Shown here: positions 18,701 through 23,799 of the stretch, piece by piece
Layout: each line of letters opens with the position of its first letter
Numbering within the stretch: position 1 is the stretch's first letter
Source of the DNA: Oikopleura dioica
Taxonomy: Eukaryota > Animalia > Chordata
Reading direction: 5' to 3'
NCBI GenBank assembly: GCA_907165135.1
Contig: OU015567.1
Location: 13,020,001 to 13,084,000 of the forward strand
DNA length: 64,000 bases
Program-made: the position numbers and the translations under genes
The notes under the pieces: model-generated
Told to the model about the DNA's origin: nothing
The model's input: the letters and a program-made list of their open reading frames with translations, nothing else
Database searches by the model: none

Positions 18701-19753
18701 CTATCTCAAATTATCGTAAAGCCCTAGATCGAAATTTTCTTCAGCTGAGTATACTCCTAAATGGCGAGATTGGTGGCAAGGCAAAGATGTCAAATATTAC
18801 CAATTCATGGGCAAAGATAATGTTCCGTTCCATTCTGTTCTTTTCCCCTCCTATTTGCTCGGCACTGGCAAGCCCTGGAATTTGGTAGGCAGACCCTAGA
18901 ACTTTCGAGAAGAAAATTTGTTTACTTAGGTGAACGTTATAAACGCGACGGAATATTTAAATTATGAAAACGGTAAGTTTTCGAAGTCGAGAGGGGTCGG
19001 TGTTTTCGGCAATCAAGCGGCAGAAACGAATATTCCATCTGATGTTTGGAGGTTTTACTTGATTTACATGAGGCCTGAAGTGCAGGATACTGAGTTCCAG
19101 GTAAGCTATTGTAATCTCAAGAGCTTGGTAGCACATAAAATTATAGTGGAGCGATTTCCAGTTGAAGAACAACTCAGAATTGCTCAACAACTTGGGCAAC
19201 TTCATCAACAGAGGACTGTCCTTTGTGGTCAAGTTCTACGACCAGAAAGTGCCCAGCGCGGAGATAAACGGAAATATGCGAGCTTGGGTTGCTGAAGTCA
19301 ACGTTTTGCTCAAGGAGTACATTGAATGCATGGAAAGTAATCAACAAAGAGAGGGATTAAGAAGAGTGCTTGCCATCTCAAAACTTGGTAACAAATTGAT
19401 TCAAACATGGCAACCGTGGGTCAAGGTCAAATCAAAGGTAAGCTTTTTCGGGGAAAAAGCTGTCTGAAATCAGTTTTAAGGATCCAGCGTTGCGCAACGA
19501 AGCATCAGCATGTGTGATGCTTTCAGCTAACCTCGTCTTTTTATTGTCCTCATTGTTGGAGCCCTTCATGCCCATGACTTCATTCGAAATCGCGAGACAA
19601 CTTGGTGTCGCGCGCGCTCAGATTCCATCAAAGTTCGGCGCTTTCTTGGAAAAAGACCACAAAGTCTACGAGAGCAGGCCATTATTCAGAAAGATTGAAG
19701 ACGAAGAAGTGAAAGAGTATCGAGTACGATTCGCGGGCAAAGCGGATAAATGA
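15731..19753 (+). CDS. MARS1: Cytosolic methionyl-tRNA synthetase with N-terminal coiled coil and no C-terminal appended domain
   Basis: [19 protein letters not shown] (HIGH), [10 protein letters not shown], zinc knuckle CPKPEC...[49 protein letters not shown]; 1458-bp intron 16526-17983; ends at a normal TGA stop. Confidence 0.97.
16603..17879 (-). CDS. Ankyrin-repeat plus SAM-domain protein nested antisense in a MetRS intron
   Basis: [10 protein letters not shown]... coiled N-terminus; ankyrin motifs [10 protein letters not shown] and [11 protein letters not shown]; SAM-like [50 protein letters not shown]; multi-exon, wholly inside intron 16526-17983. Confidence 0.7.
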
Positions 19754-19886
19754 AGAAATTAAGGGCGTAAGATAGGAAAATTATAATATTGTGGCTGCTT
19801 CTTTTTTAATTTATTTCTGTCTGTCATTCAACGAGGTTCACTTACTTACGTAGCATTTGACAAACACTTTCATCTTCAGAAGAAAC

Positions 19887-20036
19887 ATGTGCTGAGTGTT
19901 AATTTCGTGCTGTTCGGAGGCCTTCAAGGCTATCGGCCGATGTTTTGGTTGTTACAAAGACGAGGAAGACAAGCCGCAAGCTTCTTGACAACGGCCCCCG
20001 CAGCAGCAACAGCGAACTCGAGGTGGATGAGGTTAA
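19887..20036 (+). CDS. Candidate 49-aa selenoprotein A with three in-frame UGA (codons 3, 34, 48)
   Basis: MCUVLISCCSEAFKAIGRCFGCYKDEEDKPQASUQRPPQQQQRTRGGUG*; TGA at 19893, 19986, 20028; acceptor at 19879; paralogous to the next ORF; SECIS-like element downstream. Confidence 0.75.
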
Positions 20037-20051
20037 GCCTCTTCGAGAGGC
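20037..20051 (+). promoter_or_regulatory. SRE-like stem-loop 6 nt after terminal UGA (gene A)
   Basis: TGA GGT TAA then GCCTC-TTCGA-GAGGC; same layout in genes B and PITH with compensatory changes. Confidence 0.7.
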
Positions 20052-20096
20052 GAACTAAATCCACCATGCTTTGAGTCAACTCACGACTCATCCTTC

Positions 20097-20163
20097 TGGA
20101 CGAGCCAATGAAGCTTCTTGTGAAACGATTCTGTCGACACATTTTGCAGAAACTCTTCGTCCA
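20097..20163 (+). promoter_or_regulatory. Type II SECIS-like element (gene A)
   Basis: Helix I TGGACGA/TCGTCCA; ATGA at 20108; helix II GCTTCTTGTG/CACATTTTGC (four central mismatches); AAA; mini-helix CGA/TCG; GA at 20149. Confidence 0.65.
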
Positions 20164-20319
20164 ATTCTCAAATCTACTATTTCGTAAAATAAACCATTCC
20201 CTCCCATTTGATCCAGCATTATTTAATATTCCTCCATAATTATTTTGATTTCTGAATAAATTTTTCGCATTCCAATTTCGAGTTCTTCCTTAATTTTGAC
20301 TTTTCAGACAACGAACACC

Positions 20320-20517
20320 ATGGTTTTGTGATTGATTGTTTCGGGCATCCGCTCCGCGAGTAATGCCATTTCTAAGGCCCTCAAGGGTGACGATAGCCAA
20401 AAGGTAGTCTTCTTTTAATTTTATTGGTTTGAGAATGTTTAGCCTATCGAATCCTCAGGTGGCTGACAGAAACCCCAAGCTGTCGAGAAATCGCAGCAGA
20501 AGTCCAAATGAGGCTAA
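20320..20517 (+). CDS. Candidate 52-aa selenoprotein B with three in-frame UGA (codons 4, 36, 51); two exons
   Basis: Exons 20320-20403 and 20443-20517 (39-bp GT-AG intron): MVLULIVSGIRSASNAISKALKGDDSQKPIESSGGUQKPQAVEKSQQKSKUG*; TGA at 20329, 20464, 20509; acceptor ttttcag at 20307. Confidence 0.75.
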
Positions 20518-20531
20518 GCCCCATTTGGGGC
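20518..20531 (+). promoter_or_regulatory. SRE-like stem-loop 6 nt after terminal UGA (gene B)
   Basis: TGA GGC TAA then GCCCC-ATTT-GGGGC. Confidence 0.7.
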
Positions 20532-20583
20532 CCTCAATGATTCTACTTATTCATACGTCTCAGTAAGCAAAGACTTTCTTCGT

Positions 20584-20657
20584 GCGAGCTCATGAAGCCT
20601 CAAGCTCAAAGGGTACCTGCCACGACTTTTGGTGGAAAATTTTCTTCTCGTCTAAGA
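20584..20657 (+). promoter_or_regulatory. Type II SECIS-like element (gene B)
   Basis: ATGA at 20592, GCCTCAAGCT/GACTTTTGGT helix (imperfect), AAA, mini-helix GGT/GCC, GGAA with GA at 20635; helix I GCGAG/CTCGT; near-identical to the PITH-gene element. Confidence 0.65.
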
Positions 20658-20883
20658 TTGTCTTTATCCTCTTGACATCAGCAGGATAAACGATTTTTGT
20701 TGTATCACTGCTTTTCACACTTACTGTTGATATATTCAATATAAATCCTAATAAGCGATTTCTCGTGCACTGCCTGTTGTTAAAGTATATCGGTATATAT
20801 TGACTGTTCTCGTTTAATAAAAAAATCAATTTTTGATTGAAGAAAAAAGTTGAAGAATGAACTGATAGAAAACACAAACAGAG

Positions 20884-21535
20884 ATGAGTGGTTGTGTGAA
20901 ACTTGTCGAATTAGATCCCCTCGTGGACAAGGTAAAATTGTCCGAAAATTGCCGGGTGGGTATTCATGAATTTCTTATCAGGGGAAGTCTGAGTGCTTGA
21001 ACGAAGACGATGATCACACGTGGTTGAACGTGATCGAAGAATCCGCAACCGGAGAGCTCAAATCCGACTGCGATGAGCAGCTTATCCTCAGAGTAGAGTT
21101 TACTCAGCCCGTTAAGCTTCATTCTCTCGTCATTGAAGCTGGGTGTGACGCGGAGCAAGCCCCCAAAGTAAGAGAGCTTCTCGGAGGTGCGAATTTCTCA
21201 AACCAGGGTGCTTTTCTAGGAAATTCGACTCTTTGCGAATGAAACGAGTCCGATTTCTTTTGATGATGCTGAGCAGAGAAAGTCGACGCAGGACTTTGAC
21301 TTGTCCTTCGAAGAGCTGTCGAAGCCGATTGAAGTTCGATTTGTCAAATTCCAAAAAGTCAATAATATCACAATTTTCTTCAAGGTACATCTTTTCCGGG
21401 ATCTTTTTTTTTGAGTTCGCTCTTTAGAACAACCAAGGTGATCAAGATGTGACCTCCATGTCCAAAGTGCAATTTATCGGTTCGCCCATTGCCACAACGA
21501 ACATGAGCGAGCTCAAGAAGGTCGGATGAGGCTAA
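20884..21535 (+). CDS. PITH-domain-only protein (TXNL1 C-terminal-like) with predicted C-terminal Sec-Gly (...KKVG-U-G)
   Basis: Exons 20884-20931, 20982-21167, 21220-21384, 21428-21535; ECLNEDDDH, LKSDCDEQLILRVEFTQPVKLHSL, VRFVKFQKVNNITIFFKNNQGDQDVT, FIGSPIATTNMSELKKVG then TGA(21527) GGC TAA. PITH identity is firm; Sec read-through is inferred. Confidence 0.85.
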
Positions 21536-21550
21536 GCCCCTTCGAGGGGC
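21536..21550 (+). promoter_or_regulatory. SRE-like stem-loop 6 nt after terminal UGA (PITH gene)
   Basis: TGA GGC TAA then GCCCC-TTCGA-GGGGC. Confidence 0.7.
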
Positions 21551-21592
21551 GCCGCTGAACACAGCGATAAACAACATGTTTCTTCTCCAAAA

Positions 21593-21691
21593 GAGGATCT
21601 TCAGCGAACTTATGAAGCCACAAGTTCAAAGGGCCACATGCCACGACTTATGGTGGAGCGCATTTTTAATGTCATCGCTGCCTGGATTCTC
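21593..21691 (+). promoter_or_regulatory. Type II SECIS-like element (PITH gene)
   Basis: ATGA at 21612; helix II GCCACAAGTT/GACTTATGGT (9 of 10 paired, counting G-U); AAA; mini-helix GGC/GCC; GA at 21656; basal helices CAGCGA/TCGCTG and GAGGATC/GATTCTC. Confidence 0.75.
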
Positions 21692-21786
21692 TTTAAATTT
21701 ACCCTTTCTTCTGTTATAAAAATGCTTCAAAGTCAAGCTGACACCCTTTGATTGAAGAATGTTAAATCGCTAGAACAAAGAATAAA

Positions 21787-23799
21787 ATGACAGACGAATT
21801 CATGGAGAACATGGGAGAGTACTCCTTCGATATGTTGGAGTTACTCGGCACTGGTTCTTATGGATCGGTTCACAGGGCGGTGACAAAAGACGGGCTCGGA
21901 AACGAATTCGCGATCAAGAAAGTTACTACAAGCGATTTGAGCGATATGATCCGCGAAATCTCCTTCATGAAGCAACTCGACTCCCAGTTCATTATCAAGT
22001 ACTACGGATCATTCTGCTTGGACAACAGGTTAGTTTTTGGAGCTTTTTTTTGGATCAGATTTCAGAAGATCAGTTTAGCGATCGTCATGGAGTACTGCAG
22101 CGGAGGAAGTATCAGCGATATTTACAGGTGTAGAAAGCAAACACTGACAGAAGAGGCTTGCGCCACGATTATTCGGGACACCCTGTTTGGACTCGACTAT
22201 CTTCATCAGCAAAGAAAGATTCATCGAGATGTCAAGTGTGGAAATATTCTGCTGACAGGTAGTACTGCTTTCGATTTTTCGAAGAAAATTTGATTGATGG
22301 CGTTCAGAGAAGGGCGTAGCCAAGCTAGCAGACTTCGGTGTCTCCGGGCAACTTACAGAAACGTTCAATAAACGCAATACCGTCATCGGAACGCCGGTAA
22401 AGTTGCCTCATAATCGAATTAGCGGCCCAATTAAGACTCTGTTAAGTATTGGATGGCGCCGGAAGTCATTCAGGAAATCGGATACGACTGCTTAGCCGAT
22501 ATATGGTCGCTGGGGATCACTGCCATTGAAATGATAGACGGAAAACCGCCGTATTCGGAAATGCAGGTTGCTCGCGCTATTTATACGATTCCGCAAAATA
22601 GCCCTCCGACATTCAAGGAGAGTAACAAAAATCTATCTCTTGATTCAATCTTAAAAACGCTCTTGCTTTAGTCTTTCAGTTTGTTCACTTGTAATTACAG
22701 GATCCAGCAAATGTGTCGAACATTTTCAACAATTTCGTCAAGCGTTGTCTTATCAAGAAACCCGAGAAACGGAGTTCTGCTGCCGAGCTGCTGGAAGAAG
22801 AGTTCATCAAAAATGCTCGTCGATCGAGGGAACACATTATTGAAATTATTGAAGAAGCTCATGAAATCAAGAGACGACTGAGTCAGACGAAAAACAAGCG
22901 TCAGGAATCTATTAATCGTAGCTCAGGTTGATCAAGGTTGAGTCAACATGCGTTTTTACTGACTTGTGTAGGATCTGAAGAGAATGAATACAGTACTGTC
23001 CTCAAAAGCGAAAACTCTCCAGCCGGAACAATGCTTGAAGGATCATCTACGATCGTAAAGTCATTCAACAGTATGTGTGTTTACGAAAACACAACCAAGC
23101 AGTCGTCAAATCAGCGCAATACGTTCATGAATTATATCCAAGATTTGCCACCACCGCCTCAAGCTGCCCAGATTAGGTAACGCGTATATATATTTACGTC
23201 TTTGAGATAAATAGCCCAGAACAGCGGTTGAAACTTTAGAAATAGAAACGTCTTGATAAAAAGAAGCGAAATACTGTTGTAAAGCTCATGTAACAAATGG
23301 AGAGATAAAAAAAAACTATTACATATGTAGTAATTAACCGCGTTTTAAAAAGTATGAACCCAGATGTAGAAGAAATACGCAATATTCTAAAGGGAACGCG
23401 AAACCTGAAAGATTACTCGAGCGATCAGCTACGCAGATTTTTGGATTTAATTGACCCCATGATGGAGCAAGAACTCGAAGAAACGCGCGAGGCCTATTTG
23501 CAAAAGCAAAAGCCTATTACTGACGTAAGTCTTACTGTATTTCTCCGCATTTATAAGACCATGCTCTTATTAAACTTGAGTCTTGGTCACCAAGATGGGA
23601 TTTTTTGGAACTAAAGTGGAAACACTCTTCAACAACCAATTTGTTTTTTTTTCATAATTTTTCTACGGGGCTCACACTCAAGAAAACTCTTGTCTTTTCT
23701 TCAGTGCTCACGTGATTGCTTATTTGCTAACAACACTTTTAGGCATTAGAAGCAAAAAGACTTGCGCGACGGAATATGCAAGAAAAATACAACAACTAA
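21787..23799 (+). CDS. STK3: Hippo/MST STE20 kinase with C-terminal SARAH domain
   Basis: [76 protein letters not shown]; SARAH-like [33 protein letters not shown]. Confidence 0.92.

What the first reader, a model, noticed from the sequence alone, without database searches (positions are those of the whole stretch)
19887..21691. Cryptic cluster of three candidate selenoprotein genes sharing a UGA-GGY-UAA / hairpin / SECIS cassette
Seen: three consecutive + strand genes end in TGA-GG(T/C)-TAA. Each is followed at once by a 5-6 bp GC stem-loop, and 78, 81 and 83 nt after the UGA by an ATGA...AAA...GA element with SECIS type II geometry. Established: eukaryotic Sec insertion needs a 3'UTR SECIS, and penultimate Sec-Gly termini occur in thioredoxin reductases. 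Inference: all three encode Sec, forming a co-transcribed selenoprotein unit between MetRS and Hippo that ordinary annotation would miss (two genes) or truncate (PITH). I do not recognise these families as known selenoproteins.
Basis: partly seen in the sequence, partly recalled or inferred. Interest (0 to 1): 0.95.

Follow-up and report, generated by a model that had tools for sequence, protein, structure and literature searches.

The report
Three clustered hidden selenoprotein genes
Three neighbouring Oikopleura genes (two ~50-residue microproteins with three in-frame UGAs each, and a thioredoxin-less TXNL1/PITH protein) very probably end in selenocysteine-glycine and share one 3' recoding module, so they are likely unannotated selenoproteins and show a stop-codon-recoding tail being copied between unrelated genes.

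Summary
TGAGGYTAA occurs only three times in the 64 kb (20028, 20509, 21527, all on +). Each copy is followed at once by a 5-6 bp GC hairpin, and 80-85 nt later by an AUGA...AAA...GA stem-loop.

The SECIS reading is supported. Rfam SECIS_1 is the top or only family hit on cassettes 2 and 3, but below threshold (16-17 bits against a gathering score of 35). It gives nothing for cassette 1.

Two other Oikopleura dioica lineages (L006, L007) keep the whole MetRS-g1-g2-PITH-Hippo cluster. All seven in-frame UGAs are conserved. pN/pS in the UGA frame is 0.10-0.33, against 0.08 for PITH and 1 or more in the other frames. The codon after the terminal UGA varies only synonymously (GGC/GGG/GGA/GGU), and the next stop changes from UAA to UAG.

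RNA shows each gene is trans-spliced to the O. dioica spliced leader. For g1 and g2 the mRNA is colinear with the genome across the UGAs, so no intron removes them.

Best reading (about 0.8): three selenoproteins with a SelS/SelK/TR1-like 3' architecture, namely a C-terminal Sec, a proximal stem-loop and a form-2 SECIS. The microprotein family is new, and so is a Sec-tailed TXNL1 orthologue that lost its Trx domain and its zinc-binding His tail.

Sec itself, as opposed to another amino acid, is not shown. The scan's first readers had noted this same stretch in four other notes.

The parts
19887..20036 (+). g1: intronless 49-codon micro-ORF, MCU...ASU...GGUG-stop. In-frame UGAs at 19893-19895, 19986-19988 and 20028-20030, then GGU UAA.
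   Evidence: Translation. An SL-bearing metatranscriptome contig is colinear over 19877-20275. pN/pS is 0.19-0.33 in this frame and 1 or more in the others; all UGAs are kept in L006 and L007.
20037..20051 (+). Proximal stem-loop 1 (GCCUCU-UCG-AGAGGC), starting at the first base after the stop.
   Evidence: L006 has a U.G wobble at the pair that is C-G in cassettes 2 and 3.
20096..20161 (+). SECIS-like element 1 (AUGA 20108-20111, AAA 20123-20125, 3' GA 20149-20150, 7-bp helix I).
   Evidence: The minimum-free-energy fold gives the SECIS shape. Model R1 scores it at E 0.017. Compensatory changes in the mini-stem (CGA/UCG to CAA/UUG) and in helix I (G-C to U-A) are seen in L006/L007. There is no Rfam hit.
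20320..20403 (+). g2 exon 1 (MVLU LIVSG...SQK), UGA at 20329-20331. The SL acceptor is about 20307/20308.
   Evidence: The SL appears as a loose end before 20320 in 31-45 reads per run. Translation.
20443..20517 (+). g2 exon 2 (PIESSGGU QKPQAVEKSQQKSKUG-stop), UGAs at 20464-20466 and 20509-20511. The intron 20404-20442 is 39 nt and keeps the frame.
   Evidence: The joint 20397>20441 is seen in 35-53 reads per run. pN/pS is 0.10-0.13; variable columns by codon position are 3/1/19.
20518..20531 (+). Proximal stem-loop 2 (GCCCC-AUUU-GGGGC).
   Evidence: The stem is invariant. The loop reads AUUU / AAUU / GGUA in the three lineages.
20580..20651 (+). SECIS-like element 2 (AUGA 20592-20595, AAA 20608-20610, GA 20635-20636).
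   Evidence: Rfam SECIS_1 is the only hit: 17.0 bits, E 0.45, full-length alignment. It is a conserved island in the other lineage's mRNA, 20585-20633.
20884..21535 (+). g3: PITH-only TXNL1 orthologue. Exons 20884-20931, 20982-21167, 21220-21384 and 21428-21535; it ends ...KKVG-UGA(21527-21529)-GGC-UAA.
   Evidence: Two introns are confirmed by read joints, and the SL is seen as a loose end before 20884. PF06201 PITH is recorded for the 95%-identical ORF product. The best PDB matches are TXNL1. pN/pS is 0.08.
21536..21550 (+). Proximal stem-loop 3 (GCCCCU-UCG-AGGGGC).
   Evidence: It is identical in L006 and L007, although the stop just before it changed from UAA to UAG.
21600..21668 (+). SECIS-like element 3 (AUGA 21612-21615, AAA 21628-21630, GA 21655-21656).
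   Evidence: Rfam SECIS_1 is the top hit: 16.1 bits, E 0.82, full-length. G.U to A-U and G-C to G.U changes keep the pairing in L006/L007. Reads of the other lineage map to 21574-21647 and hardly at all to its flanks.

Best explanation
Three consecutive SL-trans-spliced Oikopleura dioica genes encode selenoproteins that end in Sec-Gly. g1 and g2 are paralogous microproteins of about 50 residues. Each has three Sec codons: at residue 3 or 4, at about residue 35, and at the penultimate residue. g3 is the TXNL1 orthologue. It has lost its thioredoxin domain, and its His-terminated tail is replaced by ...KKVG-Sec-Gly.

Each mRNA carries its own recoding module. This consists of UGA-GGN-stop, a 5-6 bp GC stem-loop starting at the first 3'UTR base, and a form-2 SECIS (AUGA / AAA / GA) 75-113 nt after the terminal UGA.

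Inferred mechanism: SBP2/eEFSec bound to the SECIS delivers Sec-tRNA to every in-frame UGA of the short mRNA. The stem-loop, which sits at the ribosome's entry channel when the last UGA is in the A site, is the counterpart of the proximal stem-loop of SelS/SelK/TR1. It may slow termination or position the SECIS.

Shown here: the sequence anatomy, the transcript structure, translation-type selection across the UGAs, and conservation and covariation of the RNA elements. Inferred: that the inserted residue is Sec, what the stem-loop does, and what the proteins do.
For: (1) Motif and geometry.

(2) Transcripts. The O. dioica SL (sequence given in PMC6883708) is joined just upstream of each ATG. 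A contig (g1) and reads (g2) run colinear through the UGAs, hairpin, spacer and SECIS.

(3) Three lineages (window, L006, L007) keep the cluster. All 7 UGAs are conserved.

(4) Coding selection in the UGA frame. pN/pS is 0.19-0.33 for g1 and 0.10-0.13 for g2, against 0.08 for PITH, and 1 or more in the other two frames. Third-position excess gives P=0.004 (g1) and 2e-6 (g2). The signal is present both before and after the middle UGA. Indels in g1 are multiples of 3. The ATG of the rival ORF (19940) is lost in the other lineages.

(5) After the terminal UGA, the Gly codon is GGC/GGG/GGA (g2) and GGC/GGU (g3), and the stop is UAA or UAG.

(6) SECIS. Rfam SECIS_1 is the best or only family for elements 2 and 3, aligned end to end. 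AUGA, AAA and GA are invariant in 9 of 9 copies. 79% of cells are paired, against 23-47% in slid controls, and the covariation score exceeds 500 of 500 shuffles. Compensatory changes occur in the mini-stem and helix I of element 1. Spacer length varies from 75 to 113 nt while the elements stay fixed.

(7) The species has an SPS2-Sec gene (PMC4561486).

(8) The same architecture is known for SelS (ends GGUG), SelK and TR1 (PMC6844570).
Against: - SECIS_1 scores of 16-17 bits are far below Rfam's gathering score of 35, and element 1 gets no Rfam hit.
- Helix II has 1-4 non-Watson-Crick positions in its middle in every copy.
- Within cassettes 2 and 3 alone there is no double-sided compensatory change.
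- Helix I of element 3 is only about 3 bp.
- To my knowledge Sec at residue 3 or 4 is unprecedented.
- No Cys-containing homologues of g1/g2 were found.
- Related TXNL1 genes end in His and not Cys (L003/L004).
- For PITH, translation past the UGA rests on only two codons.
- No ribosome, mass-spectrometry or 75Se data were available.
- tRNA-Sec, SBP2 and eEFSec were not checked in this genome.
Confidence: 0.8

Rival explanations
1. The UGAs are translated, but by Sec-independent readthrough (a near-cognate tRNA inserting Trp, Cys or Arg). The stem-loop next to the stop stimulates this, and the downstream AUGA element has another role.
For: Selection across the UGAs shows decoding but not which residue is inserted. 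3' stem-loops can stimulate UGA readthrough without a SECIS (SRE/HRE, PMC4561486; PMC3159437 by title and abstract). SECIS scores are below threshold.
Against: The internal UGAs of g1 and g2 have no adjacent hairpin, yet they are equally conserved. The downstream element has the invariant AUGA/AAA/GA signature and its best Rfam family is SECIS. It is the most conserved part of each 3'UTR. Seven UGAs are kept with none replaced by a sense codon in three lineages, at pS 0.2-0.5.
Confidence: 0.08
2. The UGAs are ordinary stops. PITH ends at ...KKVG, g1 and g2 are non-coding or encode only 2-3 residue peptides, and the shared cassette is a 3'UTR regulatory or processing element of an operon.
For: UGA is used as a normal stop nearby (MetRS, 19751-19753). 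For PITH only two codons lie beyond the UGA. A default annotation would read it this way.
Against: pN/pS of 0.1-0.3 and strong third-position bias extend through and beyond the UGAs of g1 and g2, while the other frames look neutral. The changes after the terminal UGAs (three Gly codon variants in g2, GGC>GGU in g3, UAA>UAG in g3) all keep Gly-stop. My own estimate is about 0.28 per random substitution, or roughly 0.006 if these are at least four independent changes.
Confidence: 0.06
3. Each 'UGA' is the TG of a Cys codon followed by the first base of a non-canonical hairpin-bearing intron, as another note of this scan concluded for a different Oikopleura gene family.
For: Note s1-331774 reports such introns in this genome. 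A conserved hairpin follows the terminal UGAs.
Against: No joints occur at any UGA. The only joints are the g2 intron, two PITH introns and one minor alternative at a PITH intron. The g1 contig and the g2 reads continue colinear with the genome (with L006 for the diverged lineage) through the UGA, hairpin, spacer and SECIS. The cassette-3 spacer has a 23-nt indel between lineages, so no ORF continues there.
Confidence: 0.02
4. The (G/A)AUGAGG at the recoding site, together with a downstream partner, forms a k-turn or box C/D-like small RNA embedded in the transcripts.
For: AUGA overlaps the UGA in the window's three copies. A CUGA follows in cassette 3.
Against: The base before UGA is G in L006 cassette 2 (AAG UGA), so that AUGA is not conserved. 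No snoRNA family scores better than SECIS. No partner box is conserved across the cassettes.
Confidence: 0.01

Closest known systems
Selenoprotein S / selenoprotein K (SELENOS, SELENOK) mRNA 3' architecture
   Same: Sec lies at the penultimate (SelS ...GGUG, identical to the g1 ending) or antepenultimate residue. A conserved proximal stem-loop sits at the very start of the 3'UTR, and a SECIS lies downstream (PMC6844570).
   Different: g1 and g2 are about 50 residues long. They have no predicted transmembrane segment (maximum Kyte-Doolittle mean 1.2-1.3 over 19 residues) and two further Sec residues, one at residue 3 or 4. The SECIS lies only 75-113 nt from the UGA. No SPUR-like element was looked for.
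Thioredoxin reductase C-terminal GCUG motif
   Same: Sec-Gly-stop, with the SECIS serving a UGA at the very end of the ORF. TR1 also has a proximal stem-loop (PMC6844570).
   Different: No Cys precedes the C-terminal Sec (the endings are GGUG, SKUG, VGUG). There is no flavoprotein domain. g1 has a Cys-Sec pair, but at its N-terminus (MCU).
TXNL1 (thioredoxin-like protein 1, Trx + PITH)
   Same: g3's PITH domain and tail align to human TXNL1 residues 135-192 and 250-281. A related metagenomic larvacean-like gene (L003/L004) aligns to the same exons and is a full Trx+PITH gene.
   Different: g3 mRNA starts with the SL 34 nt before a start codon at the Trx-PITH linker, so there is no Trx domain. 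The tail is 5 residues shorter and ends GUG in place of ...GKKGESH. The terminal His289 of that tail binds the Rpn11 zinc in human TXNL1 (PMC12700798).
Multi-Sec selenoproteins (SelP, SelL)
   Same: Several UGAs in one ORF are served by a 3'UTR SECIS.
   Different: There are three Sec in about 50 residues with a single SECIS. No thioredoxin-like fold or His-rich domain is present, and there is no detectable similarity to the Trx part of the related TXNL1 (z about 0).
SRE / HRE stem-loops next to Sec-UGA (SEPN1, SPS genes)
   Same: A stable stem-loop lies a few nucleotides 3' of the recoded UGA and is reported to promote decoding (PMC4561486).
   Different: Here the stem-loop lies wholly in the 3'UTR, after a two-codon tail. 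It is shared by unrelated genes as part of a duplicated module.

Membership tests
Eukaryotic SECIS element (form 2) | AUGA core on the 5' arm and GA on the 3' arm facing it | tested here: met
   Invariant in all 9 copies (3 cassettes x 3 lineages) and placed opposite each other by the fold and by the Rfam alignment.
Eukaryotic SECIS element (form 2) | Unpaired AA(A) about 10-13 nt after AUGA, followed by a mini-stem and apical loop | tested here: met
   AAA lies 11-12 nt after AUGA. The 3-bp mini-stem is 100% paired, with G-C/G.U and C-G/U.G variants, and CGA/UCG changes to CAA/UUG in element 1.
Eukaryotic SECIS element (form 2) | Continuous helix II of about 9-12 bp between the core and the AAA | tested here: inconclusive
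   Ten positions, 74-82% of cells paired, but 1-4 non-standard pairs in the middle of every copy. Three pairs change on both sides once element 1 is included.
Eukaryotic SECIS element (form 2) | Score at or above Rfam SECIS_1 gathering threshold (35 bits) | tested here: not met
   17.0 and 16.1 bits for elements 2 and 3 (best or only family, E 0.45 and 0.82 for 111 nt against 4227 families). No hit for element 1.
Eukaryotic SECIS element (form 2) | Lies in the 3'UTR of an mRNA with an in-frame UGA, at least about 51-111 nt downstream of it (PMC8659212) | tested here: met
   The mRNAs are colinear through the element. Terminal UGA to AUGA is 75-113 nt.
Eukaryotic SECIS element (form 2) | Binds SBP2 and supports Sec insertion | not testable with these tools
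   Needs a reporter or binding assay.
Selenoprotein gene | Protein-coding conservation across the in-frame UGA | tested here: met
   pN/pS is 0.10-0.33 in the UGA frame, on both sides of the internal UGAs. Changes beyond the terminal UGA are silent.
Selenoprotein gene | Cys (or Sec) homologues aligned at the UGA in other taxa | tested here: not met
   None found for g1/g2. The related TXNL1 genes end in His. The relative L008 lacks the cluster at the syntenic site. Searches were limited.
Selenoprotein gene | Sec machinery present in the organism | not tested
   Literature only: O. dioica has an SPS2-Sec gene (PMC4561486). Unchecked notes of this scan list GPx, SelW and deiodinase genes with SECIS in this genome.
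SelS/SelK family | N-terminal transmembrane helix plus a Gly-rich, basic C-terminus with Sec near the end | tested here: not met
   There is no hydrophobic stretch of TM strength. Only the C-terminal ...GGUG / ...KUG resembles the family.
TXNL1 | PITH domain | tested here: met
   PF06201 is recorded for the ORF product P0002. TXNL1 chains are the best PDB matches, E 4e-11 and 5e-4.
TXNL1 | N-terminal thioredoxin domain | tested here: not met
   The SL is joined about 34 nt upstream of the ATG at 20884 in 57-67 reads per run. The related genes L002 and L003 do carry Trx coding sequence upstream on the same contig.
TXNL1 | C-terminal His that coordinates the Rpn11/PSMD14 zinc (PMC12700798) | tested here: not met
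   The tail ends ...KKVG-UGA-Gly. The alignment stops at human V281, so the Sec falls at about position 283. L003/L004 end ...GKAGESH.

The most novel reading that the evidence does not exclude
The UGA-Gly-stop / stem-loop / SECIS unit is a portable 'Sec-tail' module that was copied between neighbouring, unrelated genes. Cassettes 2 and 3 are 78% identical column by column across the SECIS region, while the proteins are unrelated. On this reading the copy turned a TXNL1 orthologue into a selenoprotein whose C-terminal selenolate replaces the His that plugs the Rpn11 zinc site. The two Sec-rich microproteins, with Sec already at residue 3 or 4, would use the same tail as small proteasome-directed or redox cofactors.
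Probability: 0.2. Interest if true: 0.95.

Novelty: new variant of a known kind. Interest (0 to 1): 0.85.

Why it matters
If confirmed, the finding adds three things.

1. A new micro-selenoprotein family with the highest Sec density outside SelP, and with Sec at residue 3 or 4. That would test how soon after initiation the Sec machinery can act.
2. The first Sec-containing member of the TXNL1/PITH family. It arose together with loss of the Trx domain and of the zinc-binding His tail, just as Rpn11 has been reported to recognise exposed thiols (PMC13648738).
3. A concrete example of how selenoproteins may be born: by capturing a ready-made 3' recoding module from a neighbouring gene, without evolving a SECIS de novo.

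It also shows that ORF-based annotation of this compact chordate genome misses or truncates such genes.

Tried and rejected
- **Rfam over the whole 2.5-kb region:** no SECIS at E up to 10. This was a search-space effect. Searches of 111 nt recover SECIS_1 for elements 2 and 3 but not element 1.
- **k-turn / box C/D reading of the AUGA that overlaps the UGA:** rejected, because the A is not conserved.
- **TG|A non-canonical intron (lead from note s1-331774):** rejected by colinear RNA.
- **Alternative-frame ORF in g1 (19889-20074):** its ATG at 19940 is lost in the other lineages, and that frame has pN/pS of about 1.
- **g1/g2 as remnants of the lost Trx domain:** no similarity to the Trx part of L003 (z 0.0 and -0.5). 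g1 against g2 gives z 4.05 (2 of 300 shuffles reach it), so they are paralogues.
- **SelS/SelK membership:** no TM segment.
- **Metagenome scan for the cassette pattern:** over 120 mostly bacterial chance hits. Only L064, 99% identical to L006, carries the cluster.
- **Protein search with PITH exon 3:** no candidates.
- **Window-wide tRNA scan:** no tRNA, hence no tRNA-Sec here.
- **His-to-Sec zinc-ligand idea:** kept only as speculation, because the tail is 5 residues shorter than in human TXNL1.
Full report
**Organism and transcripts.** The window is a compact, intron-poor animal genome. RNA reads and a metatranscriptome contig laid on 19650-21850 carry, as unaligned 5' ends, the sequence ...GTCCGATTTCGATTGTCTAACAG just upstream of the three start codons. 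The loose ends lie before 19877, 20320 and 20884. This is the 3' part of the 40-nt Oikopleura dioica spliced leader as printed in PMC6883708.

All three genes are therefore SL-trans-spliced mRNAs. g1 starts at about 19879, g2 at about 20308 and g3 at about 20850. Gaps between one gene's AATAAA and the next acceptor are a few tens of bases. That matches the criterion used to call O. dioica operons, intercistronic distance of 60 bp or less (PMC7986045). Co-transcription is not shown directly.

**Observation.** TGAGG[CT]TAA occurs three times in 64 kb, at 20028, 20509 and 21527, all on +.
- Each copy is followed at once by a GC hairpin of -9 to -11 kcal/mol.
- ATGAAGC...AAA...GA elements start 80, 83 and 85 nt after the first base of the UGA.
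- The three cassettes align to one another, so they are duplicates.

**Gene models.** g1 (19887-20036) has no intron. g2 has a 39-nt intron (20404-20442), defined by a read joint seen in 35-53 reads per run, and this intron keeps the frame. The products read MCU...ASU...GGUG-stop and MVLU...GGU...KSKUG-stop, with UGAs at codons 3/34/48 and 4/36/51. With U scored as C the two align at z=4.05, so they are paralogues.

g3 has four exons; two of its introns are confirmed by joints. It encodes a 166-residue PITH protein ending ...KKVG-UGA-GGC-UAA.

**Comparative evidence.** I used the Hippo-kinase ORF downstream as a handle and fetched three syntenic contigs.
- L006 (an NCBI assembly) is the lineage of RNA runs X17-X19.
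- L007 is a metagenome contig.
- L008 is a more distant species, with 74% identity in the kinase.

L006 and L007 both hold MetRS-g1-g2-PITH-Hippo with all three cassettes. In L008, MetRS (with a WHEP exon) runs straight into the kinase, so the cluster is absent there.

Across the three O. dioica lineages all seven UGAs are unchanged.

| Gene | pN/pS in the UGA frame | pN/pS in the other two frames | Variable columns by codon position |
|---|---|---|---|
| g1 | 0.19-0.33 | 1.0-4.9 | 4/3/13 (P=0.004) |
| g2 | 0.10-0.13 | 1.3 or more where defined | 3/1/19 (P=2e-6) |
| PITH (control) | 0.08 | 1.2 or more where defined | 11/2/62 |

The third-position bias holds both between UGA1 and UGA2 and between UGA2 and UGA3. 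Indels in the Gln-rich part of g1 are multiples of three. The ATG of the only rival ORF in g1 (19940) is CTG in the other lineages.

Beyond the terminal UGA the next codon is GGC/GGG/GGA in g2, GGC/GGU/GGU in g3 and GGU in g1. The stop is UAA everywhere except g3 of L006 and L007, where it is UAG. The only changes seen in these six bases are therefore the ones that keep 'Gly-stop'.

**No splicing or editing at the UGAs.** A note elsewhere in this genome (s1-331774) explained a conserved in-frame TGA as TG|A followed by a hairpin-bearing non-canonical intron. I tested that reading here.
- The only joints in 19650-21850 are the g2 intron, two PITH introns and one minor alternative at a PITH intron.
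- The g1 contig is colinear from the SL to about 20275.
- The g2 reads run on past the hairpin and into the SECIS with exactly the L006 genomic sequence.
- No base differences at the UGAs are among the listed variants.

For g3, coverage of the last exon was too low in the diverged runs to show this directly. A 23-nt indel in its spacer excludes a conserved downstream ORF.

**RNA elements.** The hairpin starts at the first base after the stop in 9 of 9 copies.
- Its stem is invariant within each cassette apart from one U.G wobble.
- Loops differ: AUUU, AAUU and GGUA in cassette 2.
- Between cassettes one pair covaries, U-A against C-G.

The downstream element keeps AUGA, AAA (11-12 nt later) and a facing GA in 9 of 9 copies, while the spacer between the UGA and the element varies from 75 to 113 nt.

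Rfam search results depend on how much sequence is searched:
- Over the whole region nothing is found.
- On 111-nt stretches SECIS_1 is the only hit for element 2 (17.0 bits, E 0.45) and the top hit for element 3 (16.1 bits, E 0.82). Both align end to end in the expected form-2 structure.
- Element 1 gets no hit, although its minimum-free-energy fold is the best SECIS shape, with a 7-8 bp helix I.
- All scores are below the gathering score of 35.

A covariance model built from elements 2 and 3 finds the three element-1 copies (E 0.017-0.69) and nothing else in 86 kb.

On the nine-sequence alignment 79% of cells pair, against 23-47% when partners are slid. Three pairs change on both sides, and the covariation score exceeds all 500 shuffles. 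Within elements 2 and 3 alone only one-sided, pairing-preserving changes occur. In element 1, L006 changes the mini-stem from CGA/UCG to CAA/UUG, and helix I changes a G-C pair to U-A. The middle of helix II holds 1-4 non-standard pairs in every copy; this is the main structural oddity.

**What g3 is.** Its exons match TXNL1 best: PDB chains of TXNL1 at E 4e-11, and the last exon aligns to human residues 250-281.

Metagenomic relatives L003/L004 (65% identity in exon 2) are full Trx+PITH genes that align to the same PITH exons and end ...FKRVAGKAGESH-stop. L002 (78% identity) also has Trx coding sequence upstream.

[quoted passage not shown] The O. dioica protein lacks the Trx domain, because the SL is joined just before its ATG. 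It also lacks the His tail, which is replaced five residues earlier by Sec-Gly. A 2026 preprint reports that Rpn11 directly recognises exposed cysteines (PMC13648738). A selenolate ligand for that site is therefore an attractive idea, but it is untested and the tail is shorter than in human TXNL1.

**Closest known architecture.** SelS ends ...GGUG and has a conserved proximal stem-loop at the start of its 3'UTR. SelK and TR1 have one too (PMC6844570). The way recoding works here is therefore of a known kind.

What I could not find in the held literature is any PITH/TXNL1 selenoprotein or any account of these microproteins. O. dioica is reported to have SPS2-Sec (PMC4561486). Unchecked notes of this scan list GPx, SelW and deiodinase genes with SECIS elements elsewhere in this genome.

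**Verdict.** I put about 0.9 on the UGAs being decoded and about 0.8 on the full selenoprotein reading. The identity of the inserted residue, the role of the stem-loop, the functions of the proteins and the operon status remain inferences.

The near-identity of cassettes 2 and 3 on unrelated genes points to copying of the whole 3' module between neighbours. The direction of that copying is not resolved.

Noticed in passing
window 19751-19753; L008 2088-2865: MetRS of the window stops right after the anticodon-binding exon (..FAGKADK-TGA). The relative L008 continues with a WHEP-TRS exon and then abuts the Hippo kinase. The three-gene cluster sits where L008 has the WHEP exon, so the O. dioica MetRS may have lost WHEP when the cluster arose.
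   Followed up: partly
window 20857-20865: A three-codon uORF (ATG AAC TGA) lies in the PITH 5'UTR, between the SL acceptor and the start codon. It is also present in the diverged lineage's mRNA (loose end before 20884).
   Followed up: no
window 21553-21566: A second small hairpin (CGCUG-AACA-CAGCG) lies directly after the PITH proximal stem-loop. In L006 and L007 the stem is kept while loop length and sequence change.
   Followed up: partly
window 21781-21789: AATAAA abuts the Hippo-kinase start codon (AATAAAATG), so the PITH poly(A) signal or site and the Hippo 5' end must be tightly packed or overlapping.
   Followed up: no
L052 (JGI metagenome contig), - strand around 1176: This contig holds AAATGAGGGTAAGCCCCGGTAGGGGC, nearly the same as cassette 2 of L007, but model R1 finds no SECIS in it. 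It is probably a chance or bacterial terminator-like match.
   Followed up: partly
L003 / L004 (Tara-type metagenome contigs): These hold a full Trx+PITH TXNL1 gene, apparently from another larvacean-like organism. It aligns to the same PITH exons as g3 and has a His-terminated tail, so it is a useful outgroup for dating the Sec tail.
   Followed up: partly
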